Source of the DNA: Macrostomum hystrix
Taxonomy: Eukaryota; Animalia; Platyhelminthes
Length of the DNA: 64,000 bases
NCBI GenBank assembly: GCA_950097015.1
Contig: CATNEN010000009.1
Span: 620,001 to 684,000 of the forward strand
Direction: 5' to 3'
Part shown: piece by piece, positions 12,556-57,496 of the stretch
Position numbering within the stretch: the stretch's first letter is position 1
Layout: each line of letters begins with the position of its first letter
Notes under the pieces: generated by a model
Told to the model about the DNA's origin: nothing
The model's input: only the letters and a program-made list of their open reading frames with translations
Database searches by the model: none
Translations under genes and position numbers: made by a program

Positions 12556-14631
12556 TCAACTGCAAAGCGTAATGTTGAGTTCAGCGGTTTTCGTTTCAGA
12601 GCCATTTCCGGCCGGTAGGCACAGCCGCATCCACCTCAGTGGCAGATATGTGCCCTGAAAGGACCTTAACACAATCGCGCCAGACAGACAAATGACCAGA
12701 CACAGCCAGGTCGTTAGCCGCACGATCAACACAGGTCGCAGTGGCGGCAAGTGTTGAGGTTCAGCCACGTCCAACTCGACTTCACTCTCGTACGGTGACG
12801 AGTAGACTCTTGAAACCGACCTGGAATGCGCGCGTCGGCAAGTTGATGACAGCAGCGGTTCCCTTTGATTGTCGAAAGATGAATTTGGCGCAGGTTTGTT
12901 TTTATCGGCACTCGACTTCAAAGTTGGGTTATCTCCAGCAGCTCGAGCGAACGCAGCGGCAGTCTGCCTCTCCCAGTTAGTTCGCCAAACGATTATCCAA
13001 AAGATGCTGCTTTGCAGAGCGCTGCCAATCAGCATTGATAGCCAGAATCCCTTCATTTGCAGTGGGGTGAGCAGGGTCAGCGGTATTCCGATTGGCAGCG
13101 AAATGAAGTCATACGCGATAATGTTGACTATGGCTCCGAGCATCTGCTGCCCACTACCTTTCAGGACGCCTGAGGCTGTGGCAGAGAGGCCATCAAAGTA
13201 AGGATAAGGTGCGTACACAGCCAACAGATCCGCAGCCACCGCCGTGACCTCAGGGTCGCTTGTAAAGATACAAGCAATCTGTTCACGGCAAGTAGCAAAA
13301 AGTAAGCTGATAACAGTCTCAATGGCAAGAATGATGGTCACGGCCACCTTGCAGGTGTGCTTCGCCTTCTCGATGTTGCCTGCGCCAAGGTGTTGGCCAA
13401 CTCTGATGTTCACCGCAATGGACATCCCAGCACACACCATGTAGAGCAGAGTGGCGCTTTGAAACAGAATCGCCTGCGCCGCTAACTGCAGCTGGTTGAG
13501 GTTTCCAGCCAGGATTGTTCCAACCTGCGGGGCGATGTATTGCCGCAAATTACAATTGTGAAAAGGCAAAGAAGTGCAGGCGAGTGAGGGCCTTCCCTTA
13601 AAAACAATTAAACAATCGACTGACCGAGACAGACAATCAAAGCACAACATACCTCGAAGCTGGCGATTTCTAGTGCAACGAGGAGAAGACCCGGGACAGC
13701 AAGCCTAATGAAGCCTCCGATGTCGTACAGTGCCTCGACCTTCCAGCCGTCCCAGGTGTCCTCAAACACGCGAGACACGCGGATGTACACGATGATGCAG
13801 ACGCACATCACAAACAGGGACGCGGCCTGACATGCAGCCGACGCCTCGAACTCGAAGCCCATCACGTAGATGGCGATGTACTGCGAGACCGCGTTGAACA
13901 CATTGCCGATCACGGCGCACACGAGCGGAGGGTTGACGCGGTTCTGAGTCTGCAGGTACCTTGCCAACACCAGGAATGTGTAGTCAAAAAACACTCCTGG
14001 CATGAAGATGAGAATGTAGCGAGCAGTCATGTCGCTGATGATCGGATCCTGACCCAGCAGCAACAGCACGGGCTTGATGTTGAGGTGCAGGCAGTACACG
14101 GGCACCAGGAACATGTACATGACCAGCAGGCTACGCTGCAGGTACAGTCCCACTCGCTTCTTGTGCCTGCTGCCGAATGTCTGCGCAAAGTAGGTGTCGC
14201 ATCCGGTGGACAGTCCGAGACCGATGCTCAGCGCGGCCACGTTGATGAGGGTGCAAGCGAGAGCGACCGCATCCAGCTGCTCCTTTGACAGGTGACCGCA
14301 CATGATGACGCTGACAGTCTGGAGCAGAAACTGGAAGAAGCAGGTGAGAAATGCAGGCAGATGTAGTCTGGCGATCTCTCCGAACTCTTTCCAGTAGCCC
14401 AGCGGGAAGTACTTTTCTCCGAAGCGGTCGGCGACACCACGGAGGCCGTTTCGGTGAGTCACGTGCTCAAATTCTGTTGATCCATCCGCTCTGCTAAATG
14501 GTTCATATTTTAGTGGTGAAACATTTATATCAAATACGGAATGAAGGGTGTCAGGCTGGGCGCAGCAAAATCTGGCCTTCTCACCGCATTATGTCGAGAG
14601 TTGCTCCGTAGTTTGGCTTTCGTTGGTCCAT
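12556..14631 (-). CDS. SLC47A: MATE (SLC47-like) transporter, paralog 2; exons 14631-14585, 14493-13653, 13524-12556; 618 aa
   Basis: Exon 1 MDQRKPNYGATLDIMR shares the YGA motif and phase-2 intron with paralog 1. Splice junctions: CG|gtgaga..tttag|C and GAG|gtatgt..ccgcag|GTT. Total 1857 nt in frame, with the full MATE motif set. Confidence 0.88.
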
Positions 14632-39183: not shown

Positions 39184-42100
39184 TCACTGAACGCTGCACA
39201 CTTTGCTCCGATTCTTCTTCAAGGACACCTGGCTGGCCGTCAAGACCTCGGCGTCAGCCTTTGCAGCTGCCGAAGCTCCGCTTGTGTCTCGGCGCCGAGG
39301 CTTCGGCACTTTCGCTGCAGTGTTGCCGTCGCCTGCTGCAGCAGCGGCCGCCGCTTCCAGCTGACCAATGGCCACCGAAGTCCGGTGCCGATGCAGTTTC
39401 GGCTTCGCTTCCTCAGCGCCGCCACGTGCCTTTCTGCCTGTCAGGTGCTTTCCAGAGGCAATGTACTTTTCCTGCTCATCCAAATAGTTCTTGTACTTTT
39501 CGATTGCATCCGCAGACTTTTTGAAGTTTGCTTCACTGGTCAGCCGGGACCGCAGGAATACGTCTCCGTTCGTGAAGAAGCGCTCCGGAGCTCCCGAGCC
39601 GGCTGACTCGTTGGGCAGCACCGTCACCCGGCCGTTGCCGACTTTCTGGTGCTCCGGGCACAGCCACAGAATCTTGCCGCTGCCCAGCGCGCACTTGGAC
39701 AGACCCGAGTGACGCTGAGAGGAATCTGCGTCGTAATTAGAGGTTGGCTTCGTGGGATGCTCAGGACTTACTGATGCGCTTGCTTTGCTTGTATTGAGCT
39801 GATGCTCACGATTTGTTTAGCTTCATGGCTGCATCAGCTATATATCATATGAACTTACTCACTAGTAAGAAAGTACTCACTAGTGGCCCCGATAAAGAGC
39901 TGCTGCACAGCCTGATAGGCGTCTGCGAAGGACTTGGCTGAGACCGAAGCCTCGCTTCTGACTACCTGCATGAAATCTTCAGCTTGGACTCCCGACAGGC
40001 AGTTCAGCTGGATGCCGCTGGCCTGCAGCAGCGAGCAGATTCGTAGCAGGTAGACGGAGGCGGAGGACAGCAGGGAATCTAACTTTGATCGCGATTCGTT
40101 TTTTAGGCTCACGGCTGGTCCATAGACGTGCCAGCCCTACAAAGTGGTCGCACAAACTTCTGTTGTGTTGCGTTCCTTATCGATTCCGGGCACAAGCTTA
40201 GTACTTATTGACAGGGTTAATAGGCATGTACGAGGCAGGGGTCTGGCCATTCATATTACCACATCTGTATTATCGTGCATCTCATCCATTAAAATCTAGA
40301 AAACAGGCTCAAATTTTATTTCAAAACTTCTGGGATCTCAAAAATTATAAAACTACAAGGTTGCTTGTTAGAGAGAAACAAGCAGATACGTTGCACTGAC
40401 GGGTGGCAACTGCCAGATGTCATATTCTAGTTTCTCAGTAGAAGTCGCTGTTGAAAATGTCCTTCAGTAACGGAGTAAAACTTAATATTCTAGAACATAA
40501 GGGTCTAAAAAAATCTGGACTCACCCGCTGATTCTCACAGAAGACTTTGATGAGCAACTGCGGGACAATAGAGAGAGAGACGATTGTGAGCATCATTTTA
40601 TACATAAAAAGCTTCTGTAAATATAAGTAAGGCAACTTATTGACGCTATTATTCGATCTCAGCACAACGCACCAGGTCTTCCAACTTTTCTTGCTTAGAA
40701 ATGTCGCCGCGCCTGTCATCATTGAAGTCGGTGACGTCATTAAAGTCCGGCACCAGCAGCCTCGGCAAGTCGCTGTGGCTGAACTGCTTCAGGAATCGGC
40801 GCTGCGCCAGCTCGGCTTCCTCTCGGAACAGGCCCGGCTGGCTCGGAGCCGGAATGGCAACGGTGGTCTTGCGACGCACCAGCGGCTTCTCGGCCTTCCG
40901 GTTCTCTGCCTCACTGGCCAGGATACTCTTGACTCGGTTCACGAGTCTCTTGAAATCCGCATCCGGAACGTCCTTGCGAAAGTCGAACTCCTCGTAGCTC
41001 ATGCTGAGCATTCCCAGCTCCTGGGTTTTAAACGCCTGCGTTTGGCCGACTACGACAGTAACGATCGGCTTGCGCAGGTTCTTTGCTGCGAAGCGGAATT
41101 CCATCATGCAGTTGGCGCTATGCTGGTACTCGTCGCTTACGAAGGCTAGGACCAACGGGCAGCGGCCAAGGCCGGAGCTGATGTCTTCGAACAGGCTGCG
41201 CTGCAGGTGACGAAGAAATAAGAACGATCGCATTGTAACAGAAAGGAAAACATAATAAAAATGTATATTTAGGATTGTCCTCTTCAAGGCGTAATTAGCA
41301 ATTGGTTCGGAAACGGGACTGGAAAGACTCACAGCACCAGTGTCCTTTACGTCCAGCCAGCATCGAAGCCCTTCAGCCTCTAGCCTTTCCTTCAGCCGAC
41401 GAGGATCGCTGCCCTCGCATCCAAGGACTCCGTTTCGAGTTCCCTTGGCAACAGCATCGTGCGAGTTCGCCCAGCAATAAGAGATGAAGACGTCCCTGGA
41501 GTCACCCATGGATGACTGCGAATAAGACTGCTGAGTGGCTGCTTCAACCGCAGCTGTGGCGTCCTGAACAACTTCCGCGAGCTTCTCGTCGACGACAGAT
41601 TTTTTCGCATCCGTTATGTCAATGTATTTGTCCGTGCCAACGAGAAAAGCCAGCTCATGGCACTCTCTCCAAGACTTGTCTGCACCAACGCTCAAATAGA
41701 CGAGCCTCTTGCGTAGATTGTTCTTAGCACTGAAGAGTGAGTTCAGACAGGCCTTGTCGGAACCGAAGTACTTACTGATGAACACAAGCACAGCACTGCA
41801 GTCACTTAAATGCAGCTGCTTGTCTTCTCGCTGCTCCGGGTACGGTGGGTAGCTAAAATGTAGTTAAGAAAAAACTATTTTCTACTATAATTATGACTTC
41901 GAATTTTGCAAACGTTTCCCAACATTCGGAACGAGCATACACAGAATACTTCCTCACCAGCTAAGTCCGTTGGCCTCCAGTTTCTTTGTCACAGCCTCGG
42001 GACATGCTGGTCCTTTGTCGTTTTCGTTGTTTGGATAGTCATCAGGGGCAAAAAGCAGACAGACATCCCGAGTCATTTCAAGTCGAGCTCTCCTGATTCG

Positions 42101-45100
42101 CAGCAGGCTCTGCTCCAGCTGGTGGTCGAACTCAGTCAGGTTGGATGGCCGGATGTTGGCAAGCAGCTGGCTCAGGTTCAGGATATGGAACTCGAACGGG
42201 CACTGCAGAAAAGCAACCTGGCGACTGCTAGCCTTACGAATCATCGCGACACGAATGACGCTAAGCTCGCTGTCGCCCGATGAAGAATTCAGACATTCTG
42301 GACATGGCAGGATCTCCTCGTAGTGAACTCCATGGAAGGTCTCTTTGATCAGGCTGTCAAACACGTCATTGATCATGAAGAGTACATTCTCGGGCCTTGG
42401 CCCGAACACCGTCGCGATCAGCCGCTGTCGTTCGTCCATGGTGATGACGGCGATGTGACCATCCTTGCGGAGCAGCGAGCCCCGCTTCCAGATGGTGTTT
42501 CCGTCAGTGAACTCAAACAGCCGAACCTGCGCTCTGTTGAAAAGACCGGCTGGCAGGTAGTCAAACTGGTAGATGAACCTGGCCAGTGTGTTTCCCTCAC
42601 CATCCGCCTCTTGTGGGAATGAGTACTGTGGGTGTCAGTTTGAGATGCACTTGAAATTCTGTGTGCGAAGTAGAAAGTATCTCTATCTAAAGTGGGAGGA
42701 GTAAATTACTCTACCTCTGGTACATCTTCAGGTAGCAGACAGGGCACGATGTTGCAGTCATCCTTCATTGCGTAAGTCAAGTCGAAGGCCTCGGTTAGCT
42801 TCAGAAGCCATTCGTGCAGCTCCGGGTCGAACTTGTTCCAGATCGCTGGAATATCGGACCTCTTAAGCTGGCCATTCTGAAATGATTTTCAAGCCCTTTT
42901 TGTTATTTACTCAGCCCCAGTGGCGCTTCATTTCCAGTATGCTCTAATTGTCCTGGAAAGAAAACCTCCTTTATGAATATTATATTTTGTGAAATTTTAA
43001 ATTTCTATCGAAAGTACGCTCGTAAAAAAGTAGCACTGAAATTTCTACTTGCTACTTAAAAAATTAAAAATAGTAATCTGACTAGCATAATCATTGTCCA
43101 ACTTATAAAACTTACCTGAATGGGAGAGTTCTTGACGCTGACGACACAGGCCATAACGTCCACTATCCATTTCGGATTGATGACCACTTTTTGCCTGAGG
43201 TACTCGGTGTCGAAGTACTGCACTGAGCCGATGTCATTCAAGAAGCTCACAGCCTGTCTCACGTGCTTATCCTCGTAGAGGCCCTGCGACTGGGCAAGAC
43301 TCGTCACTTCCTGCCAGTCTAGAATGTTGATACGGTCCCGGGTTCGCTTCTCGATCAGGCGGTCTTCAAAGTCCAGGAAGATTCGAGGAAGCCGCTCACT
43401 CATGTACGGCTGCTGATGAGCGACTTCCACGAGTTGCTTGCGCAGGTCGCTCACTCCCTTGCCTGGAGATGAATAGGGAGGTCACTTAGCCTGCTCAAAC
43501 AAACTCCTATGTCAGTTCGTGGAAATATTTGTCCTACGGAGTGAGAACGCACCATTTTGAGACGAGACGATGTGAAATCCGCAGATCTGAGGATACCGCG
43601 ATCTGAACATCGACATCGGAATTTTGTCCGGCTTCTCAACCTGAAAATTTAGAAAAAACTGCCTTAGACATGCTACATAAATTTGTGCAACTAATGGATA
43701 TTTGTTTGACATTTGTCCCACCTGATCAGCGTGGGTGCCCACCACCAGAATCGGGGCTTTCGGTGCGTGGCTGGCGATGGAGCTAAGCCAGAAGTCCAGG
43801 CCAGCATGCTCGTAGCCTGTCCTCACGGTGTACAAAAGCAAATACACGGCCCTGTGCGTCAGGAAGAACTGGTGTGTGTTGTAGTACACCCGCTGTCCCG
43901 CAAAGTCCCACGTGCTGAAGTGCAGTGGAGCACTTCCGTCGCCAATGTCGATCTGCCAATCGCCAATGTCGATGCCGTCCGTGATCTCCTCGACGCTGAG
44001 TGTCTCCGTTGTGCCGGTCGGGCTTCGAAGAGCTCGCAGAAGGCTCGTTTTGCCTACTCCACCTAAACGCAAGAATATTTCGGCAAACGGTGCAAGTCTT
44101 CTTGTGCCCTTGAGCAGGCTTGTTAATGATTTTATCCGGTATGAAAACTAGCGTCTTCTAAATTAATCGCTTACCCAGACCAACAAACATTAGCTTCGTT
44201 CGCTTGCACTCCACTTGGTCGGATAAAAGAAATTTCAGATAGCTCAGCATGGCCGCTGATCCACGCATAGCAACCTCTACTGGTGGATTCTTCAAAGACG
44301 GGCACCTAGACACGTCCACATGGCTGAAGTGTGGCAGCTCGGACAGGCGTGGAGACAGCGACTCCAGGAGGGGATTGTGGTCCAGTGTCAGCCTGCGCAG
44401 CTTCTTCAACTGCCCGATCTTGTCTGGCAGTTGGCTGAATGCCTGCAAATCAAAGTGAATTTTGAGATGGTCGATCGCTGCGCACTTATTTCAAAGTCAA
44501 AGTATACTCAGAGCTTACGTGATGGGAAAGTCTCAGCTCTCGCAGATTCTTCAGCTCAAACAGGCAGGGTGGAAAGCCGCCAAGAGGATCACTGTCAGGA
44601 CTATCCAGCCCGAGCCGAGGGACATCAGTCACAAGCCGCCAAAACTCCGAGAGTTCCATTTTCTGCATGCGTTCGGACTGCTCGCTTGTCAGCAGGAGAT
44701 TGAAAAAGTTTTGCTCCGGTGGCAGAGGTTCAAGCCCAGCTAATGTGACTTCTGGCTTGAGCAGCTCATCGTCAACAAAGCGATGTCCGGGAGTAACGCC
44801 AGACTCTTCGATGGCCTGTAAAGCTTCGTCTGGCCATGCGATGCCGTCAATAGTGAGTTCCTGCAGAGCGCGCAGGTTGGCGAACTCCGGTGGCAGAGAG
44901 CGAATCGGCAGCTGCAGCAGGTGCAGCACGGTCAACCTGTCCAGCTGACCGATGGATGCTGGAAGGACACTGATGGGGCACCTGTCCAGTGTCAGCGACT
45001 CCAGCTTAGTGCTGCAGGTCTCAGGCACGCTGGTCACTTTCGCGATGCTGACTGTCAGATCCCGCAGATTCGGGGCATTGCAGTCAGTGCTCTGAAGGTC

Positions 45101-48100
45101 CGACTGTGTCACCGTCAGGCTACGCAGCCGTTGCATCGGCCAGGTTTTGTCCAGACTCCGCATCTTCTCTATCCTGTGCAGCTGGAGTGACTCCAGGCCA
45201 GACAGCGCGGCCAGGCAGGAAGCGTTGCTGATAAGGCGTGAGCTAATTATGGCTGCGCGAACACAACTGCCAAACGTGGCCAGGGCGGTGGCAACAACAT
45301 TCTCACCTTCACCAGCAGCAGCTGAGCTCACCAGCTCGTCTATGCAGCTCGGATGCGCGCCGCTTGTTAGCTGGTGAGCGCGGCAAACCGGCCGCATTTT
45401 CTCGTTATCTTGCTGCTGCTGCTGTTGCTGAGCTGACGAAAGGATCAGTGGTCCGTTTGGTATATTAGTGAACTCTTTGACCAGACTATTCTTGAGGTCC
45501 TCAAGTCCCTCTGGATGCTCTGCAGTGATAGCTGGTGCCGCGAGACTGCGCCAGTGCGAGAGGGCAGCTCCGAGCAGCAGCTGTCGCCTCACGGCTGTCT
45601 CCACGGCTGGGCGATAGAGGCCTGGACCCGCCAACAGCTCATGGGATGGCAGCAGCAGCTGTGGGATGAAGCAGGTCCACACATGAGGTGTCCGGTCTGA
45701 TGGAACACAACGCAATATTTTGTTCTATTCTTCCACCTACTCACCCTGTGCTGCATGAGAGACCTGACGGCGGCCTGAGCAGACAGGTGGCAGTCCAAAG
45801 CCGATGAAAGCGGGCTTTTTACTCCGTTTGAGTCTACCAGGTGCACATCAGTCGCAGATCCTGAAAGATTTTGTAAGGCAGCTCCAATGTGTCGAAGTTC
45901 TTGTGAATTAACTGAATAAACAATGGTTTTATGCAGCCTGCATGAGCGCAACTGGTGCATGACGCAGACCCACTAACCACTGTTGCACAGCAGGTGCGCC
46001 CTCAGTTTTCCAGCATCAGCAACATCCAGGATGCTGGAGTGTCGCAGAGAGCGGCCGTCCTCGCTGGTGAGGTCAGGCAGGAAAGCCCACAGGATGCCGT
46101 GGCCGATGGCAGTTTTTTTAGCCAGAGACGCCTGCAAGCTCCGCCCAAAGCCAGTGGAGATTCGGAACCCAGCGCACCGGCAGGACTGGCCATAGATATT
46201 TAAACCGTCCGTTAAATCGGTGTACTGACGCCAGTCTGGCAGCACATTTGGACTGGGGAACTTTGGTGTCGTGATCGCTGGGTCCCCAATCGCAACGGCT
46301 GAAGTGGATAGACAGACGTAAAAAAGTAGGCGAAAAATTGCTTTCAACCCATTATTAAAACTAGAGTAGGTAGTTTTGAACTCTGACGCTTATAGAACTC
46401 CCCAGTTAGCTAATAAAATTAGCGTCTGCCTTTTGTACCAAGGTCCCTGAGCTCGAATCTGAGGCGAGGCCCCTTAGAGAAGGCTTGGGGGCTTGTCGTG
46501 CAGTTTGCGCCATTGAGGGCCAACGTCCAAGGCACAGTGAGAGTGCACACTGCCTGACGATGAGAAAGTCAGGGCAGATGTAAACCTGCGTGAGAGTGTG
46601 CCTGCATACGATATCTGTGTGCGTGTGTGCTCAGGAGTCAGCGAAATGGTCAGAATCGCCTCTTCGCTGGCTGCGGGTCTACTCTAACCAATGATTGTAG
46701 TATGATAATAAGTTTATTACCGCTGATACCATTGCTTTGAAAACATACCGCTAAAGTTGGCGCGTTCCTGCCCATTCGGAGTAAAGAGACCGCCAGCGCT
46801 AAGGTCCACCGAGACGGCTGCTGAGGAGGCATCCATCGGCTGCAAAGTGACGGATTTGGCGTCCGCCTTGATGACCCTCATGAGGTCAGCGCTTGGCTTG
46901 TCCGATTTAACTGGCTCGTAACGCAGCCAGTCACCTGGACTCAGTTTTCTCGAGTATTTGATGGCCTGTGAGAACATTTTGCAGATATAGACAAGCCATT
47001 TACAGCCGTGGTTGAAAGACTAGCAAAATATTCACACACTCACTGGAAAATTTGGGGCTCTGACACAAACCCCTACACCGGCGGAAGCATTGAACACCCA
47101 GCTGTAGTTTCTGCGGGGCACGAACGCCTTCCGGACCAAGACTCCGCTCTCGAACACCTCAAGCAGGTCACACGAACCGCCCAGCTTCCTCCGGTTCTCC
47201 TTGCTGGCCTCCACAGCAATGAGTGGAGCCGAATTGCTTCGCAGCTGCTCCTGCTGAATGTCGAACTTTAGTCTCTGTGTCTGGCTTCCGACGGACTTGT
47301 TGCTCAGCACGATTTCCAGGCTGCACTCCTTGCGAAGAAATTCGGAGAACTCCAGCGGCTGGTGTTCTTGCCCTGCGCCATTCCATTCTTTCGGGTACTC
47401 AACCAAAACGTTGAGCAGAATGAAGTTCTCCTGGTCTTTTGGCGAAAATCTGAAAAATGCTGTCCGATTCATTGTCCCAGAGACTTCAGACAGTTCCGCG
47501 TCAACTGCTGCGGAATTGGCGTCTATGGTCGAACTGTCACAGATCACATGCCTCGGTGATGTCACCTGCATTGAAGGGTGTCCGAACGTAACTTGCTGTT
47601 ATAACGCGCTATGCATGATTACATGGCAAAAATTATGAGCATCTAAATTTCTGTCACCTTTATTTCTGTCTGGCCAGGAGCCAGAAGCTGTAATACAACG
47701 ACACCAGCGAATGTGGTCTTCATATAAGTCAGCTCCCTTAGGCAATCAAGACAGGTCTCTGGGAATATTCGGGCAATGCTCTGCGCACCAACAGCGGTCT
47801 CTTCCTCTTCTTTGTCCAGCGCTTCCACCAGCAGACTCTCGTGATATGTCGCTGGCTGCCAGGGAATTCGGCTGGTCAGACGGACGGCCTCCCTTGGCGA
47901 CTGCATCGCAACGCAGGGATACAGACCGCCAGGCGGAATGTCAAAGGGCTCGCTGAGATGACAGTCCTCGAACGATCCGTTGCCGAGTTTGTCAACTGAG
48001 AACAGGACTCGAGCTCGACTGGGAGCCACGAACTGCAGCTGGCAGCGAACATGGCAGCCCGGAGCGGCTTCGGGACCCGAGAACTGAAATCCAGTCTCAG

Positions 48101-51100
48101 ACGGCGCGCTTCCATTGCCATTGAAGACTCTGCAGTTTCAAACCAGATTTAAAAATGAAAATTGAAGCTCGAACAATGGAGCATATAGAGTTCCTGACTA
48201 CTGAAATAGTAAGGAAGATTGCAGGTAAGACTTCCTCACCGGCCATCCTTGCCGCAAAATCCAATCGAACCCGGCAGCATCCCGGGCTGGGACATGACGG
48301 GGTAGCCAGCTGGCACGGCACCAATGAAAATCTTTCCCTTGGTTCCCTTGCTCACAACGCCTGCAAGTCAGCAGATGGTTATTCAAATTTTGGTCTCTCT
48401 GCACAGAAAGACAATCTCCAAGCAGCATGAGCTACTCACAAATCTCAAACGAGTCATTTCGCTTAGTGAGGCTTCGCTCGCCAATCAGACTTCCAACTGG
48501 CAGAGAGACCTTAGAGACTACGGACTCTGTCCACTCCTTCTGCGTGTTGAATGAGTAGATGGCGAGCCCGGTTGTCTGCCAGACGGTGCAGAATGACTGC
48601 AAGGCGAAGCTGTAGCGCTGGCTGTTCGCACTGCTGCTCAGGACGTCATCGATAGGCTGAAACACGAATTTTATGCGATGCATGGAAACCATTGATTTTT
48701 TAACGCTTTGCTTGTTCGATAATACGAGCTAATATTGCCGAAAAAAAATAATTAGAAAGGGCGAATTAAGCGAAATCCCGAGCCTCACACTTAGAGCCGA
48801 CAGTCTGAAGCTGATGTCGATCGGCCGCTGTGCCATCGCAGGGAAGACCTCAGTTGAGAACACCGGCTCTGAGAATTTTTTCAACGTTGCTGAAGCCTCT
48901 GTAACCAATCACAGAAAAAGTAATTTTAATTCTCACCTGTTTGACTTTCCGATAGATTTGGATAAATTTCCAGGTATCCCTCGGCATGCTGCCTGAAACG
49001 CAAATTGGGCATAAATATCACAGGCAGACAGCCAGCAGTCGAATCAGCCATTTTATAATTCACTGCGACCACCACTCACTCCCAGAGTAAGACCTTCAGC
49101 TTCGGCTGGCTAGATTCCAGGGGAGCCACACTGAAGGTCACCTCCGGTGTCAATGCGGACTGCAGCCGGGCGCTGGGGCAGAGCCGCACGCAGCGGCTGC
49201 TGTCGCCGATGTCGCCGTCGTCAATGTAGCCGGGCAACGCGCAGTTGGGCCGCACGGCGCTGGCCACCGCCCAGAGGCGGGAGGCGCAACGGAAGCAGAT
49301 GCCGCAGGAGTCACAACTGGCCCCGGCTAGAGAGCCGCACAGGCAGCGACCTGGAGCGCCGGAATCGATCCTGTTGAAGCTGCACTGCACGCCGCTAGCT
49401 GAGCAGCTGCCGCACAGAGAGCATACCGACTGTTGCTGCTCCGCACTCACCTGCTGCGATTCCCACGAATGCTCGCTGTGTACGGAGTCGTTCTCTGAGA
49501 TGCGTTTCATGCGATGAGAATTCGTTTAATGTGCGCTCGTATTGCGTACCCCATTCTTCTCTGCCATTCTCTTGGGTGTGAGTGGCAGAGCAGTCTAACG
49601 CGCTTGCTTCTGGCACCAAGGTCCCGGTGTTCGATTCTGTGGCGAGGTCACATTTATTTAGGTCGCAGTCGCTAAGAAAATGCTGGGCGCGATTTACGCC
49701 CGTGAGGGCCAACTCACAAGGCACAGTGCCTAACGATGAAAAATTCTGGGCATATTACACCTATCCTGGGATTCTACTATCACCAAAAGATTGGGTCATT
49801 GCCCACAGTCCTGCTAAAAACTTTTTTATTTACCTCATTCTTGATAAGTTTGCAGTCAACCGACTTCCGTGTCGTTTATTCTTGACTTTAAAATTACTAA
49901 ACTAATTTTCCTTTACAGTCATTTGAGAACCTAGCATGCAAGCTAGAAGCTTCCCTGATCCCAGAGCTAACCAAGCCAGACCCTCACCGGGTTCACCCTC
50001 CGAGGCCCCAGTTTCCACAATGACGCCATGCCTCATCATGAGGCAATCCACGCAGTCTGTGAACAGGTGCAGAGCCGACCATAATAGTCGCCGAGTGGCT
50101 TCAGCCGCGCTGGTCTTGGCACCGGGATCCACAGGCCTGTAGGCAGTGAGCCGGAGACACCGGCTCTCATCGTCAAAGTGTACGCACACCTCAGCGCCCC
50201 AAAGGCTCCGGACGAAGCCGCGGGCAGATAGGCAGCAGAGAGACCCGAGGTGAGACGTCAGCGAGCTGAGGGCCGGGAGAATTCGGTCCGCGCTCAGGTT
50301 AATGCCGCGGTACCAGCGGTGGGCAGCCTCGAGGCCCAGGTCGGACGCGTCCTTGTCGGACCTCACGGGCCAGTCCAGCTGCCGGGCACTGGCACAGAAC
50401 ATGTTCGTGTAGAGCAGCTTGTCGTCGCTTGGCGACTCGCGAATAGGAATCACCTCGAGCAGCGCACCAGAGTCTTTGAAAATGCTGATGATATGGTCCA
50501 TCTGAAAGGAGTTCATGACGAATTGCACATGGGTCTCTTGAACCTGGAATATGTGTCAATGATTCAGGTGGCCCACCTCTTGCACCGACAGCCCCGCTTG
50601 CTGCAGTGACTTGTCCAGCTCTAGTTGGCTCCACACTCCCGCTTCGGGGCTCAGTCCGGGCAGCAACGGCCCAGCAACCAGCGGTGGCTCGAAGGGAAGC
50701 GACTCCAGTAGGGCAAAGAACCAGGTCGGGTCGGTCACGACGATGTGGAGGCGCTTGAGAAATATGATGATACCCTGAAAAGTGTTTTTGCACGAACGAA
50801 GTTAGTTAAACGATAGGAAAAATAGGCTCTATTATAAATCAGTCATTCAGTTCACGGCAAGGAACTCCATTAGGGTTTTTATTAGCAGTCCGCATAGATG
50901 CTCACTCTTTCATGCATCCAGTCCAAGTCGCGAATCAGGAAGGTTCGGTTGATCTCCTTGTCGTCTGCCAGACGGTCAATTGAGATTAGACGGCCGCCAA
51001 ATTCAGCGGTCGCTGCTTTGTGGCAAGCTGAAATGACGGCCTCACAGGTCTCGGCATACGTTGAAGCAATAGGTGACAAAGCGGAAACTGCAGCTGCGGC

Positions 51101-54100
51101 GGTCTCAGTCAGTGACTGTTGAAGTTCTCGGAGTCCGCCGCTGTCGCCTTCAACCTCGGCATCGAACACGTTGAGTTCGCTGTCGAACCGACTCTCTAAG
51201 AAGCGCCGAAGTCGTTCCGCAGCAGCTAGCGATTCCGCGGCGCGCCGCTCCGTGTTCAAAATTGGTAGTGATGCAGTCTCTGACAACATCTTCTTTGATG
51301 CCGCTGACGCTGCGGCTTCCAACAAAGCGACATTTGCCGCCAGAGCCTCCTTAACAGCTGTGCGCAGCCGCTCAGCTCCTCCCCGTTGTCGGTCGATTTT
51401 GCGGCAAAGAACCCGAAACTTTGTCTGATGCAGGAAGTCGCCTTCCTTCACCGCTTCCTCAAACTTCTCCACTTTGGCCGGGCCGGTTTTCAGCATTTTC
51501 GATGGCACTTGTGAAGCCGCCTCTATCGGGCAAAATCCCATTGTCTCAGTCACATTGTCGGCTGACCAGGAAACAAAGCCATGCGTAAGCTCCGACGAAT
51601 TTTCGCTGAACAGGGCACTTCTGCTGACTTGAACTTGCTTGACCAACCTTCCTTCTATGAAGATGCTAACCATGCAGACATTGCGAGAGTCTGACGCATC
51701 GGCGGCCACCTCCAGTGTGAGCTGGAATTCGCTGGCCTCCGGCACGGGAACATTTTCAGAGGCCTTTGGTTCCTTGCTGTTCGGTGGCGTGTGGATGCAA
51801 AGCACCCTGTCGAAGGCAGAGTTTCTGGAATGGAATTAATACGTTTGTATATTTATCATCAAGATTGCCTCAATTACAAAAGAATTAGGACAGCTTACAG
51901 GTCTTTTGAAGCATTTTTTTGGAAAGACAGCACAAGTCCAGCCGAGTGGTCGAATAATTCCTGCAGCCTGGCGAGCTGCGGCGCCTTGAGCAACTCCGCA
52001 GAAATTTTCCCAATTCCCATCGAAAACGGAGTGGAGCTCAAGATTTGCACGGAGAAGCTGCACGGCAACTGCGAGTTTGGAAACTTCAGGTCTCGCTTGC
52101 TCAGAAAAGCCCCGCTTCGACTGAGCAGCGGGAGTCTAGAAAGTATAGAAAGTAGGTTTGATCGTCTACGAGCGTATAAAGTGCTCAGTGGATTTTCCAC
52201 GGCAAAAATGTGAGCATGTCTGAACTCAAGTGATCGAGCGGATAGGTCATTTTGAAATTCCGTCAGAATGAATGATGCTTTGAAGTGAAATTATCCCAAA
52301 CATAGGTTAAGTTTTCATAAGGATCACTAGGATGTCCGTATTAGTAGTTCTAGTCTAGTATTCATGAGGACCACTAGGATGCCCGTATTAGTAGTTCTAG
52401 TCTAGTATTCATGAGGACCACTAGGATGCCCGTATTAGTAGTTCTAGTCTAGTATTCATGAGGATCACTAGGATGTCCGTATTAGTAGTTCTAGTCTAGT
52501 ATTCATGAGGACCACTAGGATGTCCGTATTAGTAGTTCTAGTCTAGTATTCATGAGGATCACTAGGATGTCCATATTAGTAGTTCTAGTCTAGTATTCAT
52601 GAGGACCACTAGGATGCCCGTATTAGTAGTTCTAGTCTAGTATTCATGAGGACCACTAGGATGCCCGTATTAGTAGTTCTAGTCTAGTATTCATGAGGAC
52701 CACTGGGATGTCCGTATTAGTAGTTCTAGTCTAGTATTCATGAGGACCACTGGGATCTTTGAATTAGTAGTTCTTGTCAAGCCTCTCTTAAGCTTCAGTT
52801 CAAACTTCCCGGCAAAATCAATGAAAATTTCAGAGATCAGTGAGCATGAGCACTTACACCCATCCCTGCTCGACTCGGGCTCCTATGCAAAGGCCAGCAT
52901 CCGTGAGCTCCAGCAGCGTTGGCTCCTGGACGAGCTCTTCCTGGTCCTGGTACTCCGTCTGCAAAGCCTCCATATCCATCTGCGCCTCCTCAAGCATGCC
53001 CGACTTCTTCTTCGCCTTGGCTTTCGTGGGCGCTTTCTTCAGCATAGTCTTCGACTTCTGAGGAGCCGCCTTCAGCTGGATAAGCGCTGCTCGGCTGACC
53101 ACCGGCATCGGACGGGCGACCGGCTTCAGAGCCTGCTTCGTGATCTTCCTTCGCAGCAAAGGATTTTCCTGTGCGGTTATTTGTAGCATGAAACGGTGTA
53201 TACAATACACTTTATAGCTGGTGGCTTCAATCTAGAATGTACTGATTAAAACAATGGAGACTGACCCGAGCCACAAAGTTGGTTAGACAGGCCGTCACGT
53301 GAGCCACTGCGCTATCGAAATCGTTCTCAACGGCAATCACAACCTGGTCCGGCTGGCTAGTGAAGTACTGAATGTTGTAAGCCTGTGTAATTGGTTTCCA
53401 TTTTGTGATTCATGTAGTATGTCTTTTCTTAAAAAAGCGTACTGATAACAGGCTAGATTAGCAATACTAGTAGTGAATTTAGTAATAGGGTCTGTGGGCA
53501 CAGGCTAGATTAGCAATAGTAGTAGTGAATTTAGTAATAGGGTCTGTGGGCACAGGCTAGATTAGCAATAGTAGTAGTGAATTTAGTAATAGGGTCTGTG
53601 GGCACAGGCTAGATTAGCAATAGTAGTAGTGAATTTAGTAATAGGGTCTGTGGGCACAGGCTAGATTAGCAATAGTAGTAGTGAATTTAGTAATAGGGGC
53701 TGTGGGCACAGGCTAGATTAGCAATGGTAGTAGTGAATTTAGTAATAGGGTCTGTGGGCACAGGCTAGATTAGCAATAGTAGTAGTGAATTTAGTAATAG
53801 GGGCTGTGGGCACAGGCTAGATTAGCAATAGTAGTAGTGAATTTAGTAATAGGGGCTGTGGGCACAGGCTAGATTAGCAATAGTAGTAGTGAATTTAGTA
53901 ATAGGGTCTGTGGGCACAAGCTAGATTAGCAATAGTAGTAGTGAATTTAGTAATAGGGGCTGTGGGCACAGGCTAGATTAGCAATAGTAGTAGTGAATTT
54001 AGTAATAGGGTCTGTGGGCACAAGCTAGATTAGCAATAGTAGTAGTGAATTTAGTAATAGGAGCTGTGGGCACAGGCTAGATTAGCAATGGTAGTAGTGA

Positions 54101-57100
54101 ATTTAGTAATAGGGTCTGTGGGCACAGGCTAGATTAGCAATGGTAGTAGTGAATTTAGTAATAGGGTCTGTGGGCACAGGCTAGATTAGCAATGGTAGTA
54201 GTGAATTTAGTAATAGGGGCTGTGGGCACAGGCTAGATTAGCAATAGTAGTAGTGAATTTAGTAATAGGGTCTGTGGGCACAGGCTAGATTAGCAATAGT
54301 AGTAGTGAATTTAGTAATAGGGGCTGTGGGCACAGGCTAGATTAGCAATAGTAGTAGTGAATTTAGTAATAGGGTCTGTGGGCACAGGCTAGATTAGCAA
54401 TAGTAGTAGTGAATTTAGTAATAGGAGCTGTGGGCACAGGCTAGATTAGCAATGGTAGTAGTGAATTTAGTAATAGGGTCTGTGGGCACAGGCTAGATTA
54501 GCAATGGTAGTAGTGAATTTAGTAATAGGGTCTGTGGGCACAGGCTAGATTAGCAATGGTAGTAGTGAATTTAGTAATAGGGGCTGTGGGCACAGGCTAG
54601 ATTAGCAATGGTAGTAGTGAATTTAGTAATAGGGTCTGTGGGCACAGGCTAGATTAGCAATAGTAGTAGTGAATTTAGTAATAGGGGCTGTGGGCACAGG
54701 CTAGATTAGCAATGGTAGTAGTGAATTTAGTAATAGGGTCTGTGGGCACAGGCTAGATTAGCAATAGTAGTAGTGAATTTAGTAATAGGGGCTGTGGGCA
54801 CAGGCTAGATTAGCAATGGTAGTAGTGAATTTAGTAATAGGGTCTGTGGGCACAGGCTAGATTAGCAATAGTAGTAGTGAATTTAGTAATAGGGGCTGTG
54901 GGCACAGGCTAGATTAGCAATAGTAGTAGTGAATTTAGTAATAGGGGCTGTGGGCACAGGCTAGATTAGCAATAGTAGTAGTGAATTTAGTAATAGGGGC
55001 TGTGGGCACAGGCTAGATTAGCAATAGTAGTAGTGAATTTAGTAATAGGGGCTGTGGGCACAGGCTAGATTAGCAATGGTAGTAGTGAATTTAGTAATAG
55101 GGTCTGTGGGCACAGGCTAGATTAGCAATAGTAGTAGTGAATTTAGTAATAGGGGCTGTGGGCACAGGCTAGATTAGCAATAGTAGTAGTGAATTTAGTA
55201 ATAGGGTCTGTGGGCACAGGCTAGACTAGCAATAGTAGTAGTGAATTTAGTAATAGGGTCTGTGGGCACAGGCTAGATTAGCAATGGTAGTAGTGAATTT
55301 AGTAATAGGGTCTGTGGGCACAGGCTAGATTAGCAATAGTAGTAGTGAATTTAGTAATAGGGGCTGTGGGCACAAGCTAGATTAGCAATAGTAGTAGTGA
55401 ATTTAGTAATAGGGGCTGTGGGCACAGGCTAGATTAGCAATGGTAGTAGTGAATTTAGTAATAGGGTCTGTGGGCACAGGCTAGATTAGCAATGGTAGTA
55501 GTGAATTTAGTAATAGGGTCTGTGGGCACAGGCTAGATTAGCAATAGTAGTAGTGAATTTAGTAATAGGGGCTGTGGGCACAAGCTAGATTAGCAATAGT
55601 AGTAGTGAATTTAGTAATAGGGGCTGTGGGCACAGGCTAGATTAGCAATGGTAGTAGTGAATTTAGTAATAGGGTCTGTGGGCACAGGCTAGATTAGCAA
55701 TAGTAGTAGTGAATTTAGTAATAGGGGCTGTGGGCACAGGCTAGATTAGCAATGGTAGTAGTGAATTTAGTAATAGGGTCTGTGGGCACAGGCTAGATTA
55801 GCAATAGTAGTAGTGAATTTAGTAATAGGGGCTGTGGGGGCACCGACTCAAAAATTGCAACACTCAGCATACAGCCATGCAGTGAGTAGGCGATTTCGCG
55901 TGCACATTACGCTGAAGCTTGAGCTCACGGATACGAGAAGCAGGCCCTGACTTAATAGGATACAAAATGGGATAAAAGCACTTACAGGCAAGCAGAGTTC
56001 AACAGCAGTGACTTTTGTCTGTCCGGCAGCTTCCAGGAACTGCGAGTCAGCTACCGTACCCCTCACAGCGGGTCTGAGACGGCCTTCTTTCACAGTCCGC
56101 AGCGGGCTGTACTGCAGCTCCGGGCTCGTCAGGAAGAGCAAGCTGGACACGGCTAGAACAGCGGGAGTGCTTGCTGGCTTCGATGGGTTTGAAGTGGACA
56201 GGAGGAGGTCACTCCGAACAGAGGAGCTCGGGCCAAATATGTTGAGCGGCAGAGTGACCGAGTTGAAAGTGAGTCCGGGGCACTGCCGAATGTCCAGGTC
56301 TAATTCCAGAGACTGAAGCGGTGGCATGGCTCAATGGTACTCTGCTGGAACTCTGCTGGGAATTTCAAAACAAAAGGCTTGACTTTGCTGGCATTACCTT
56401 GGCCCGAATGGCATCACCGGCTGCCAGGGTTTCACAGAGCCAGCGAATTCCAGTGTCAGTGATGTGGCTCTCGCCTCTAAATGACAGGCGAAAGCGCTTG
56501 GCATCCGATTTGCTCGCCTGGATTGGATGGGAAATAGCGATAGCGACTTTCGTGAAAACTGATAGAGAGAAATCAAGTCTCTTGGATTACTGGCAAAATC
56601 AGCTTACCAGAGTGCTGGACAGGGACCTCAGGGTAAGGTCTGTCATTAGGCTGGACCAAACAGATATTTTTTCTTTCCCTTCACCACGGCCATCTGAGCT
56701 AAAGTATACTGTCGAGCCTTTGACTTCGAGATTGCTGAAGGTGCCCTGAAATAGCAGAAAATCATAACTGCTGCCTGATTCGACCACAAGACAAAGCAAT
56801 GCTTCGTAATCAATGCATAGCACACAAATTCTTACCTCAAGCAAGCTTTCTTTCAGTAGATGGCGCTCATACACATCAACCACAGTTTCTTCTTTAGTGG
56901 CCCTTCGAAGGGTCACAGGAGATGTGTCTCGCGACTCGTAAGTCGGTGAATTCACAGATGCGGATGGCGGGCCCGCCTTCCTGGCAAGCTGCAGATCGCC
57001 GCTGCCGAAGAGTTCGTCCTCATCGTCTCCAAAAAGGTTGCCGTAATTTTCGTTCGCTGTGGGAGACGACACGCTGTACGCCGGACTCGAAGCTCTTTTT

Positions 57101-57303
57101 TCAGTTCTGAGCCGTGTCGATGAGTAGTCTGCACTATCAAAAGGTCTTGAAGCCTTGCGATTCGGGAGAACGTTTGGTAACTGCGGTAAAGCTTTTTGTG
57201 GCAACTGCGGTGGTGGGGCTTGCTTTGACACCTGTTGGAGAGACCTGTTGAAGTCTCTCGAAGGGCCCTTTTTAGATTGAAAAGTGAAGTTTGAATTCTG
57301 CAT
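39184..57303 (-). CDS. Giant kinase-less Roco-family protein (~3,600 aa, ~32 exons): SPRY-like / degenerate ROC-COR / Cys-rich / SPRY repeats / LRR / ROC / COR / TIR / TIR / CaaX
   Basis: Phase-consistent GT-AG exon chain: 57303-56836, 56745-56608, 56558-56418, 56312-55986, 53168-52858, 52135-51899, 51824-50906, 50774-50577, 50543-49988, 49570-49451, 49398-49080, 48992-48937, 48898-48789, 48656-48440, 48360-48240, 48129-47658, 47565-47044, 46965-46749, 46298-45978, 45911-45745, 45658-44519, 44442-44175, 44062-43722, 43640-43553, 43462-43116, 42876-42715, 42625-41958, 41852-41333, 41200-40673, 40557-40525, 40136-39881, 39725-39184 (sum 10,830 nt). The junctions at 56418/56312, 50577/50543 and 49988/49570 are the least certain. 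Confidence 0.75.
40673..42100 (-). other. Tandem TIR (TIR_2-type) domains of the Roco protein
   Basis: TIR1: DVCLLFAPDD...VTKKLEANGLSC...SDCSAVLVFISKYFGSDKACLNSL. TIR2: DVFISYCWANS...PRRLKERLEAEGLRCWLDV...LFEDISSGLGRCPLVLAFVSDEYQHSANCMMEFRFA..LRKPIVTV. Confidence 0.85.
41958..44210 (-). other. ROC GTPase + COR domains
   Basis: G1 RTKLMFVGLGGVGKT (split by an intron), G2 ITDGIDI, G3 WDFAGQ, G4 VGTHAD, G5 VSS. COR motifs: FLNDIGSVQYF, VVINPKWIVDVM, VPCLLP, FDYLPAGLFNR, WKRG, CPEC. Confidence 0.93.
44210..45230 (-). other. Leucine-rich repeats preceding ROC
   Basis: LxxLxLxxN/C-type repeats (LESLTLDRCPISVLPASIGQLDRLTVLHLLQLPIRSLPPEFANLRALQELTI; LKNLRELRLSHH; LKKLRRLTLDHNPLLESL) ending in NPPVEVAMRG. 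Confidence 0.9.
46430..46590 (+). mobile_element. tRNA-derived SINE-like copy (5'-truncated)
   Basis: Shares ggtccctgagctcgaatctgaggcgagg, ggggcttgtcgtgcagtttgcgccattgagggccaac and aaggcacagtg..tgcctgacgatga with the copies at 49575 and 61573. Confidence 0.6.
47044..48898 (-). other. SPRY/B30.2-like domain(s), SPRYD3/RanBPM type
   Basis: The spliced sequence is SFEICVVSKGTKGKIFIGAVPAGYPVMSQPGMLPGSIGFCGKDGRVFNG...GCHVRCQL...RVLFSVD...GGLYPCVAMQSPREAVRL, which follows the SPRY pattern FEV..I.IG...PGW..SIG.H..DG..F..LYP.V. Confidence 0.8.
49574..49760 (+). mobile_element. tRNA-derived SINE-like copy in a Roco intron
   Basis: Head gagtggcagagcagtctaacgcgcttgcttctggcaccaaggtcccggtgttcgattc has Pol III A/B boxes. 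The body (aggtcacatttattt..gagggccaactc..) is shared with 61573-61735. Confidence 0.7.
52313..52774. repeat. 47-bp minisatellite, ~9.5 copies, intronic
   Basis: catgaggaccactaggatgcccgtattagtagttctagtctagtatt recurs with period 47. Confidence 0.95.
53448..55837. repeat. 52-bp satellite, ~46 copies, intronic
   Basis: cacaggctagattagcaatagtagtagtgaatttagtaatagggtctgtggg recurs with period 52 (53499, 53551...). Confidence 0.97.
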
Positions 57304-57496
57304 AGTTTAGGCTTTTTGCCTAGTCGGATGATCTAGTTCGACTTTGGTTCAGTCCCTGAAAAAATCGAAGGTAAAGTCGTATACTTGTGCAATGTGCAAA
57401 CTTGCATTGTAACATCGGAACCATTGCTAGTTTATTTTCGCTAGTGATCATTTTTTTCGTTTATTTTATTTATTTTAAATAATTTTATGGACTAAC

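What the first reader, a model, noticed from the sequence alone, without database searches (positions are those of the whole stretch)
39184..57303. Single ~3,600-aa kinase-less Roco protein with SPRY, LRR, ROC-COR, tandem TIR and CaaX
Seen: the many ORF fragments across 39-57 kb splice into one frame through ~32 exons, spanning two satellite-filled introns. Known: Roco proteins (LRRK1/2, MFHAS1, DAPK1) carry ROC-COR; LRR, SPRY and TIR are sensor and effector modules of innate immunity. Invertebrate LRR-ROC-COR-TIR proteins exist but are essentially uncharacterised and often mislabelled as kinases. No kinase domain is present here. Inference: an NLR-analogous switch in which SPRY/LRR sense, ROC-COR gates oligomerisation through GTP, and TIR is the output at a membrane.
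Basis: partly seen in the sequence, partly recalled or inferred. Interest (0 to 1): 0.85.

Follow-up and report, generated by a model that had tools for sequence, protein, structure and literature searches.

The report
Giant prenylated Roco GTPase with TIRs
One expressed 32-exon flatworm gene encodes a 3,592-residue kinase-less Roco GTPase with SPRY, LRR, two TIR domains and a lipid-anchor signal. It belongs to a conserved but unstudied animal family that could be a GTP-switched innate-immune device in a phylum lacking Toll-like receptors.

Summary
On the minus strand, 57303-39184 is one gene of 32 canonical GT..AG exons: CDS 10,776 nt, 3,592 aa, no internal stop. Spliced RNA contigs prove 13 junctions, including both satellite-filled introns, and their lengths fit exons 1-25.

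Domains shown:
- LRR, an intact Roc GTPase, COR-A and COR-B.
- Two TIRs. TIR1 is degenerate. TIR2 is highly conserved and has an invariant Glu.
- A divergent SPRY of the SPRYD3/RanBP9 type.
- C-terminal CSVQ. A CaaX box is kept in 11 of 19 relatives from flatworm, nemertean, annelid, molluscs and amphioxus.
- No kinase, NACHT or membrane-spanning segment.

Added here: a winged-helix, weakly COR-like region; a Cys-rich cluster; and a conserved Cys/His domain after the TIRs with no solved fold match.

The closest protein is the Macrostomum lignano orthologue (73% identity), whose public model lacks about 670 N-terminal residues. The NLR-like switch reading is reasonable but untested. LRR-ROC-COR-TIR proteins were noticed in Aplysia, but I found no description of the full architecture.

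The parts
39184..57303 (-). Whole coding gene: ATG 57303-57301 to stop TGA 39186-39184; 32 exons, 3,592 aa. The RNA contigs start near 57383.
56836..57303 (-). Exon 1 (aa 1-156), Ser/Pro-rich and low in complexity. An in-frame TAA lies just upstream at 57309-57307.
56608..56745 (-). Exon 2 (138 nt; same size in M. lignano)
56398..56517 (-). Exon 3 (120 nt; same size in M. lignano)
55986..56312 (-). Exon 4. Its last 30 nt are the loose end that RNA contigs carry beyond 53382.
53383..55985 (-). Intron 4 (2,603 nt), filled by a 52-bp x 46 satellite at 53448-55838
53266..53382 (-). About 85% identical at protein level to M. lignano.
52858..53168 (-). Exon 6
52136..52857 (-). Intron 6 (722 nt) with a 47-bp x 10 satellite at 52310-52778
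51899..52135 (-). Exon 7
50906..51824 (-). Exon 8. The public M. lignano model starts at a Met that matches window 51541 inside this exon.
49988..50774 (-). Exons 9 (50774-50577) and 10 (50501-49988)
49988..51202 (-). aa 781-1117: winged-helix region with a weak COR-A-like signature (IIIFLKRLHIVVTDPTWFF). No GTPase motifs lie upstream of it.
49080..49494 (-). Exon 11. It contains a conserved Cys-rich cluster (aa 1140-1200, window 49244-49426).
48789..48992 (-). Exons 12 (48992-48937) and 13 (48868-48789)
47658..48656 (-). Exons 14 (48656-48440), 15 (48360-48240) and 16 (48129-47658)
47808..48509 (-). SPRY domain, aa 1350-1520, split over exons 14-16. It is of the SPRYD3/RanBP9 type and divergent in Macrostomum.
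45745..47565 (-). Exons 17 (47565-47044), 18 (46965-46749), 19 (46298-45978) and 20 (45860-45745). This is a region of unknown fold, aa 1571-1962.
44519..45658 (-). Exon 21 (1,140 nt). The LRR region begins near 45124.
44194..45124 (-). Leucine-rich repeats, aa 2141-2425 (exons 21-22; exon 22 = 44442-44175)
43386..44193 (-). Roc GTPase, aa 2426-2600 (exons 22-25: 44062-43722, 43640-43553, 43462-43116). Motifs GLGGVGKT (K2436), DFAGQ (D2484) and THAD (D2544) are intact.
42071..43385 (-). COR-A and COR-B, aa 2601-2929 (exons 25, 26 = 42876-42715, 27 = 42625-41958). 94% identical to M. lignano.
41555..42070 (-). TIR1, aa 2930-3066 (exons 27-28; exon 28 = 41852-41333). Divergent, with Ser3005 where TIR2 has Glu.
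40904..41500 (-). TIR2, aa 3085-3239 (exons 28-29; exon 29 = 41200-40673; in-frame intron 41332-41201). Glu3174 (41101-41099) is invariant in the family.
39523..40675 (-). Post-TIR Cys/His domain, aa 3316-3480 (exons 29 end, 30 = 40557-40525, 31 = 40136-39881, 32 = 39725-39187). Motifs FCENQRGWH and WLCPEH.
39187..39198 (-). CaaX box CSVQ (Cys3589) after a basic stretch KKNRSK, followed by TGA TGA

Best explanation
Shown: this is one transcribed gene for a 3,592-aa (about 395 kDa) soluble Roco-family protein. Its order is: disordered N-terminus; winged-helix (weakly COR-like) region; Cys-rich cluster; SPRY; unknown region; LRR; Roc; COR-A/COR-B; TIR1; TIR2; Cys/His domain; basic tail with CaaX. 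The GTPase motifs are intact, there is no kinase, and the gene has orthologues in several spiralian phyla and in amphioxus.

Inferred mechanism: the CaaX tail is prenylated and holds the protein on the cytosolic face of a membrane. The Roc-COR unit works as in other Roco proteins, as a nucleotide-dependent conformational and dimerisation switch. The N-terminal SPRY and LRR surfaces bind a ligand or partner. The switch then releases or assembles the tandem TIRs. The conserved TIR2 would be the active face, and the degenerate TIR1 a partner or regulator. Output would be TIR-TIR scaffolding or NAD+ cleavage, most likely in innate-immune or stress surveillance. In function it resembles an NLR or a bacterial LRR-Roc-COR-effector conflict protein. 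In membership it is a Roco protein, not an NLR or a TLR.
For: Gene structure:
- Spliced RNA contigs are absent from DNA.
- The frame stays open through 32 exons.
- Word shares and contig lengths fit the model.
- Orthologous upstream exons are present in M. lignano.

Domains:
- Pfam finds Roc 9e-18, COR-A 3e-16, COR-B 4e-28 and TIR_2 1e-13 on the window's own exons.
- The G1, G3 and G4 motifs are intact.
- The nearest solved relatives are LRRK2 Roc-COR (6e-39) and C. tepidum Roco (3e-30).
- SPRY: E 1.9e-15 to a Pfam-positive SPRY, and the family profile against SPRYD3 gives 6.8e-36.
- TIR2 is 55% column-identical across phyla, with an invariant Glu aligned to the catalytic Glu of plant and Cat1 TIR NADases.
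- CaaX is kept in 11 of 19 relatives in at least 5 phyla.

Context:
- Roc, COR and TIR2 are the most conserved parts between the two flatworms, at 88-94%.
- Bacterial LRR-Roc-COR-TIR proteins exist, and the TIR of one matches defence effectors.
- TLRs are absent from Platyhelminthes, including M. lignano (PMC8609888).
- LRR-ROC-COR proteins with variable effectors are described as conflict systems (PMC8195603).
Against: - There are no functional data of any kind. Immune role, ligand sensing, GTP-gated assembly and prenylation are all inferred.
- The LRR is not unusually divergent between the two flatworms (70% against 73% overall), and the gene looks single-copy here. That does not resemble a fast-evolving receptor.
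- The TIR2 Glu is shared with the non-enzymatic TLR1 and TLR6. The Trp four residues before it in NADase and TLR motifs is Asn here, so enzyme activity is open.
- No PADLOC defence model matches the animal protein.
- About 1,600 residues (aa 1-780 and 1521-2140) have no assigned fold.
- Junctions of exons 26-32 lack read evidence.
Confidence: 0.5

Rival explanations
1. The protein is as described, but its role is not immune. It would be a membrane-bound regulator of trafficking, cytoskeleton or signalling in the manner of LRRK2 or MFHAS1. SPRY, LRR and the TIRs would serve as ordinary protein-interaction modules.
For: The closest solved relative of the Roc-COR core is LRRK2. The protein is strongly conserved between flatworm species and across phyla. 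It is single-copy in the window and expressed in apparently unchallenged animals. The SPRY is of the RanBP9/SPRYD3 scaffold type rather than the TRIM/PRY-SPRY type.
Against: Tandem TIRs are otherwise found almost only in immune or cell-death signalling. The same LRR-Roc-COR-TIR order occurs in bacteria, where the TIR matches defence-type models. No kinase or Rab-directed output is present.
Confidence: 0.25
2. It is a SARM1-like executioner. TIR2 would be an NAD+-cleaving enzyme held inactive by the N-terminal half and the GTPase, and released by metabolic or injury cues rather than by pathogens.
For: An invariant Glu sits at the position of the catalytic Glu of plant TIR and Cat1 NADases. The best PDB profile hit of TIR2 is the NAD-cleaving Cat1, at 1.7e-7. 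The long auto-inhibitory-looking N-terminal region resembles SARM1 logic (general knowledge).
Against: The same Glu is present in TLR1 and TLR6, which are not known as NADases. The conserved Trp of the W-x-x-x-E motif is replaced by Asn. No structural model of the TIR pocket was made here.
Confidence: 0.17
3. The region holds two or more genes, for example an upstream gene at 57.3-52 kb and a Roco gene starting at the Met used in the M. lignano annotation. The contigs would then be assembly chimeras.
For: The M. lignano public model starts inside exon 8. Logan contigs are short-read assemblies and break at several places. Distant relatives show no detectable similarity to aa 1-870.
Against: Three runs from two studies give the same joints. 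One contig spans about 57383 to 51205. The frame stays open across every junction. Exon sizes and splice sites are conserved upstream of the M. lignano start, also in frame.
Confidence: 0.03

Closest known systems
Macrostomum lignano hypothetical protein BOX15_Mlig008399g1 (PAA58707.1; 2,913 aa)
   Same: It is collinear with window 51541-39187 at 73% identity, with the same domains, the same intron positions and a terminal CNIQ box.
   Different: It is a different species or a deep paralogue. The public model lacks the first ~670 residues, whose exons are present upstream in its contig. Its introns lack the two satellites.
Uncharacterised 2,800-3,300-aa proteins of Tubulanus, Ylistrum, Pecten, Haliotis, Sinanodonta and Branchiostoma (the last labelled 'MFHAS1')
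   Same: They have SPRY, LRR, Roc, COR-A/B, TIR-TIR, the post-TIR Cys/His domain and CaaX in the same order.
   Different: The core is only 25-45% identical. No similarity to window aa 1-870 was detected except the 871-1201 block. Their SPRY passes the Pfam threshold, whereas the flatworm one does not.
LRRK2 / LRRK1 (human Roco kinases)
   Same: LRR-Roc-COR core; the best solved sequence relative (6e-39). Large multidomain proteins that act on membranes.
   Different: The window protein has no kinase and no WD40, and no ARM or ANK repeats were detected. TIRs stand where the kinase would be. Membrane attachment would be by its own CaaX rather than by Rab binding.
Aplysia 'TLRs' and MyD88-like proteins with ROC and COR domains (PMC9334734)
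   Same: LRR, ROC, COR and TIR occur in one invertebrate protein. The authors suggest a novel GTPase-linked TIR cascade.
   Different: That paper describes them only by InterPro domains, with Mbt, EF-hand or Death accessory domains. It does not mention SPRY, tandem TIR, the C-terminal domain or CaaX.
Bacterial LRR-Roc-COR proteins with variable C-terminal effectors ('AP-GTPase' conflict systems; PMC8195603), including LRR-Roc-COR-TIR (P0270, P0276)
   Same: The core order is the same, and identity is ~27-34% over 81-100% of the LRR-Roc-COR query. A TIR sits in the effector position.
   Different: They are about 900 aa, with a single TIR and no SPRY, CaaX or post-TIR domain. The animal protein matches no PADLOC model.
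NLR / STAND receptors and SARM1
   Same: The logic is alike: repeat sensor, then nucleotide switch, then death-fold or TIR output. SARM1 is an auto-inhibited TIR enzyme.
   Different: The switch is a Ras-like GTPase, not a NACHT or NB-ARC ATPase. There are no ARM or SAM domains. This is analogy only.

Membership tests
Roco proteins | Roc (Ras-like) GTPase domain with nucleotide-binding motifs | tested here: met
   Pfam Roc 9.1e-18, 65 bits against a cut-off of 27, on window 43515-44147. GLGGVGKT, DFAGQ and THAD are present.
Roco proteins | COR domain directly after Roc | tested here: met
   COR-A 60 bits and COR-B 98 bits on window exons. LRRK2 and CtRoco are the best PDB matches.
LRRK / DAPK subfamilies | Protein kinase domain | tested here: not met
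   No Pkinase hit at E<=0.01 on any window ORF piece or on P0001, P0008 or P0045.
MFHAS1 orthologues | Closest vertebrate relative is MFHAS1; LRR-Roc-COR only | tested here: inconclusive
   One amphioxus relative is labelled MFHAS1. MFHAS1 did not appear among 120 listed relatives of the core, and no tree was built. The extra SPRY, TIR and CaaX parts differ from MFHAS1.
TIR-domain proteins | TIR profile match | tested here: met
   TIR_2 scores 52.2 bits against a cut-off of 28 on window 40652-41863. Each exon alone scores 27.9 and 27.8 bits. Profiles hit Cat1, TLR1/6, plant TIRs and MyD88.
TIR NADases (SARM1, plant TIR, bacterial TIR) | Catalytic Glu in the alpha-C motif and a competent NAD pocket | tested here: inconclusive
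   Glu3174 is invariant and aligns to the Glu of WCLDEL / CWDEL. TLR6 has it too, and the Trp at -4 is Asn. TIR1 has Ser instead. No assay or model was made.
SPRY domain | SPRY profile match | tested here: met
   Window aa 1349-1519 matches the Pfam-positive SPRY of P0045 at E 1.9e-15. Family profile A3 against SPRYD3 2yyo gives 6.8e-36. Caveat: Pfam on the M. lignano orthologue alone gives 16.7 bits, below the 26.3 cut-off.
CaaX-prenylated proteins | Cys four residues from the C-terminus | tested here: met
   The protein ends ...KKNRSKVCSVQ followed by stop. 11 of 19 relatives end in C-x-x-M/Q/S/L.
CaaX-prenylated proteins | Actual prenylation and membrane binding | not testable with these tools
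   This needs a labelling or localisation experiment.
Toll-like receptors | Signal peptide, ectodomain LRR and a transmembrane helix before the TIR | tested here: not met
   The N-terminus is hydrophilic. The best 19-residue hydropathy window scores 1.67 and contains Arg and Ser. Roc-COR lies between the LRR and the TIR.
NLR / STAND | NACHT or NB-ARC ATPase | tested here: not met
   No such Pfam hit on window pieces or on relatives.

The most novel reading that the evidence does not exclude
This family is a third, Roco-based class of animal intracellular immune receptor, alongside NLRs and TLRs. It would be a prenyl-anchored, GTP-gated machine descended from bacterial LRR-Roc-COR-effector conflict proteins. 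Its tandem TIRs would assemble on membranes to signal or to cleave NAD+. In TLR-less flatworms it would be a main entry point of TIR signalling.
Probability: 0.25. Interest if true: 0.85.

Novelty: new variant of a known kind. Interest (0 to 1): 0.6.

Why it matters
Roco GTPases are studied almost only through LRRK2, and TIR signalling almost only through TLRs, SARM1 and plant or bacterial TIRs. Here both are joined in one conserved protein with its own membrane anchor. The host phylum is reported to have no TLRs, and its genus can be manipulated by RNAi and transgenesis. That makes two questions directly testable. What does a Roc-COR switch control when the output is not a kinase? Do animals use GTPase-gated TIR devices like those of bacteria?

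The work also corrects a public gene model, which lacks about 670 residues, and shows that the 'serine/threonine kinase' names of the family are wrong.

Tried and rejected
- Pfam on all large ORF pieces of 46-57 kb found nothing.
- A word-index search with exon 4 found no protein. One with the N-terminal region found only the M. lignano paralogue cluster.
As the tool advised, I laid the part beside it (47470-53460). Exons 1-4 and 17-32 therefore have no laid reads.
- A second, hidden ROC-COR (note s1-258471) is only partly supported.
  - For it: Atlas features point to COR (0.94, but recognition is below the trusted level), and hhalign gives 28% probability, E 6e-4, on the COR-A winged helix.
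  - Against it: the AF2 model is poor (pLDDT 49); Foldseek is not significant, with the CtRoco COR at rank 14, E 0.19; VIA-align shows a generic winged helix, with LRRK2 COR-A at Z 8.5, no better than unrelated winged helices; and no G motifs lie upstream. I report a winged-helix, possibly COR-derived region and no second Roc.
- The post-TIR domain has no PDB fold match and no Atlas lead. aa 1527-1967 also has no lead.
- phmmer of the TIR pair against PDB found nothing. Profiles were needed.
- PADLOC gave nothing for the animal protein.
- MFHAS1 orthology could not be established.
Full report
**Observation**

The region 39-57 kb carries dozens of minus-strand ORF fragments. Pfam on the fragments themselves finds the following:
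- LRR at 44489-45724;
- Roc at 43515-44147, 9e-18;
- COR-A at 43059-43481 and 42709-42888;
- COR-B at 41957-42634, 4e-28;
- TIR_2 at 40652-41863, 1e-13.

Nothing was found in 46-57 kb, and no kinase anywhere.

**RNA evidence**

Four runs of one study hold 0.76-0.77 of the sampled words of 40652-45724. Runs of two studies hold 0.67 of 55851-57400. As the tool advised, I laid the stretch beside it, 47470-53460.

Contigs of X1, X7 and X9 show twelve joints, all with CT..AC ends on the + strand (GT..AG for a minus-strand gene). None is present in the DNA run X5. They include the 722-nt intron 52136-52857, which carries the 47-bp x 10 array.

All three runs also have a loose end at 53382. Its 30 letters are identical to window 55986-56015, the end of exon 4. 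So 55986 is spliced to 53382 across the 52-bp x 46 satellite. The frame is unaffected because 117 is a multiple of three.

**Gene model**

With the RNA joints and canonical sites for exons 1-4, the first 16 exons give 1,570 codons without a stop.

For the remainder I wrote a spliced protein-to-DNA aligner and guided it with the M. lignano protein P0151. It reproduced all nine RNA-proven junctions between 47.6 and 50.9 kb, and it gave 16 further exons ending at TGA 39186-39184.

The full model has 32 exons, 10,776 nt and 3,592 aa, all with GT..AG borders.

Independent checks:
- The expected 31-mer share of 55851-57400 is 0.666 if exons 1-4 are spliced as modelled and 0.899 if unspliced. The observed value is 0.67.
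- For 40652-45724 the expected share is 0.752. The observed value is 0.76-0.77.
- Contig X1-4 (2,417 nt) then starts near 57383, about 80 nt upstream of the ATG. That ATG follows an in-frame TAA.
- Exons 17-25 sum to 3,360 nt, against the 3,366 nt that contig X9-18 extends below exon 16.

**Comparison with M. lignano**

The closest protein is M. lignano PAA58707.1 (P0151, 2,913 aa). It aligns from window 51541 to the stop at 73% identity.

Its contig (L001) is collinear with the window upstream of the annotated start as well. A spliced alignment of the window's N-terminus to L001 finds in-frame orthologues of exons 1-8, with identical 138- and 120-nt exons. The public model is therefore truncated, and the 5' exons belong to the gene in both species. 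The M. lignano introns lack the satellites.

**Domains**

*Roc.* It has GLGGVGKT, DFAGQ and THAD. Its best solved relatives are LRRK2 (6e-39), C. tepidum Roco (3e-30) and LRRK1.

*TIRs.* The two TIRs align to each other (30% identity, E 2e-9), and each matches TIR_2 at about 28 bits. In an alignment of 17 relatives, TIR2 is very conserved, with an invariant Glu in the C-x-M-E-F motif, while TIR1 is divergent and lacks the Glu. This agrees with note s1-258499.

The TIR2 profile hits the NAD-cleaving Cat1 best (1.7e-7), then TLR6, TLR1, plant TIR NADases and MyD88. The Glu aligns with the catalytic Glu of the NADases but also with the Glu of TLR6. The Trp usually found four residues earlier is Asn. 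Enzyme activity therefore cannot be read from sequence.

*SPRY.* Pfam fails on the window exon and gives only 16.7 bits on the M. lignano orthologue. However, window aa 1349-1519 aligns at E 1.9e-15 to the Pfam-positive SPRY of a scallop relative. The family profile also matches SPRYD3 at 6.8e-36 and RanBP9/10 at 1e-18.

*CaaX.* The protein ends KKNRSKVCSVQ followed by stop. Eleven of 19 long relatives from flatworm, nemertean, annelid, bivalves, gastropods and amphioxus end in a CaaX box after a basic or Ser-rich stretch. Most of the others look truncated or mis-extended.

*No membrane segment.* There is no convincing transmembrane segment or signal peptide.

**Further conserved modules**

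1. aa 871-1201 is shared with nemertean and bivalve relatives (E 1e-17 to 1e-19). It contains a winged-helix part with a weak COR-A-like signature and a Cys-rich cluster. I found no second Roc.
2. aa 3316-3480, after the TIRs, is shared by about 35 proteins, with invariant C, E, W, H ... W, L, C, H. AlphaFold gives pLDDT 79. There is no PDB fold match. In AlphaFold DB it recurs only in other Roc or TIR proteins.

Regions aa 1-780 and 1521-2140 remain unassigned.

**Family and literature**

Relatives of 2,000-3,300 aa with the same order occur in Tubulanus, Dimorphilus, several molluscs and Branchiostoma. Fragments occur in rotifers, Capitella and a nematode. UniRef names many of them 'non-specific serine/threonine protein kinase', although none has a kinase domain.

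Beyond animals, the LRR-Roc-COR core is ~27-34% identical to cyanobacterial and myxobacterial Roco proteins. Two of these carry a C-terminal TIR, and that TIR matches defence-system models in the one tested, P0270.

In the papers I could search:
- An Aplysia immunome study notes LRR-ROC-COR-TIR proteins and suggests a new GTPase-linked TIR cascade (PMC9334734).
- Bacterial LRR-GTPase-COR proteins with variable effectors are described as conflict systems (PMC8195603).
- TPR-ROCO-TIR is mentioned for a red alga (PMC11378527).
- TLRs are reported absent from Platyhelminthes, including M. lignano (PMC8609888).
- I found no description of the SPRY ... TIR-TIR ... CaaX architecture.

**Interpretation**

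Shown: one expressed gene; the architecture; intact GTPase motifs; conservation of TIR2, of the post-TIR domain and of the CaaX box.

Inferred: prenyl anchoring, a nucleotide-driven switch, and TIR assembly or catalysis as output, probably in immunity or stress surveillance.

Points against a classical fast-evolving receptor: the LRR is no more divergent than the rest of the protein, and the gene is single-copy in this window.

The main rival readings are a non-immune membrane regulator and a SARM1-like NAD+ executioner. A multi-gene artefact is unlikely.

**Verdict**

The gene is a member of an unnamed, uncharacterised Roco-TIR family that is a new variant of known kinds. Interest is moderate to high, because the full architecture appears undescribed and the host is experimentally tractable.

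Noticed in passing
window 4673-6555 and 12559-14588 (minus strand): Two tandem MATE-family transporter genes. Each has two MatE halves, at Pfam E 1e-28 to 1e-31.
   Followed up: partly
window 49470-49669 (inside intron 10 of the Roco gene): A short element repeated in the genome. DNA run X5 depth is 473 there against about 99 elsewhere, with several loose ends at 49570-49611.
   Followed up: no
window 52310-52778 and 53448-55838: Both intronic satellites (47 bp and 52 bp) are over-represented in the DNA run, at depth 165-545 against about 99, so they also occur elsewhere in the genome. The 52-bp array has a strong GC skew of 0.5. The orthologous M. lignano introns lack them.
   Followed up: partly
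L001 6648-10000 (M. lignano NIVC01002342.1): The public protein PAA58707.1 starts at an internal Met. In-frame orthologues of exons 1-7 lie upstream, so the model lacks about 670 residues.
   Followed up: yes
P0001, P0015, P0017, P0027, P0034, P0151 (UniRef names): Family members are named 'non-specific serine/threonine protein kinase'. No kinase domain was found in the two of these scanned with Pfam (P0001 whole, P0151 in part) or in relatives P0008 and P0045.
   Followed up: yes
P0270, P0276 (bacterial proteins): Bacterial LRR-Roc-COR-TIR_2 proteins of about 900 aa. The TIR of P0270 matches PADLOC TIR effector models.
   Followed up: partly
runs X9, X10: Both are labelled 'DNA?', but X9, the one that was laid, gives only spliced contigs over this gene, so it behaves as RNA.
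   Followed up: yes
window 41201-41332: Intron 28 (132 nt) is in frame and has no stop. If retained, it would insert 44 residues into TIR2. The word share cannot tell 0.752 from 0.784.
   Followed up: partly
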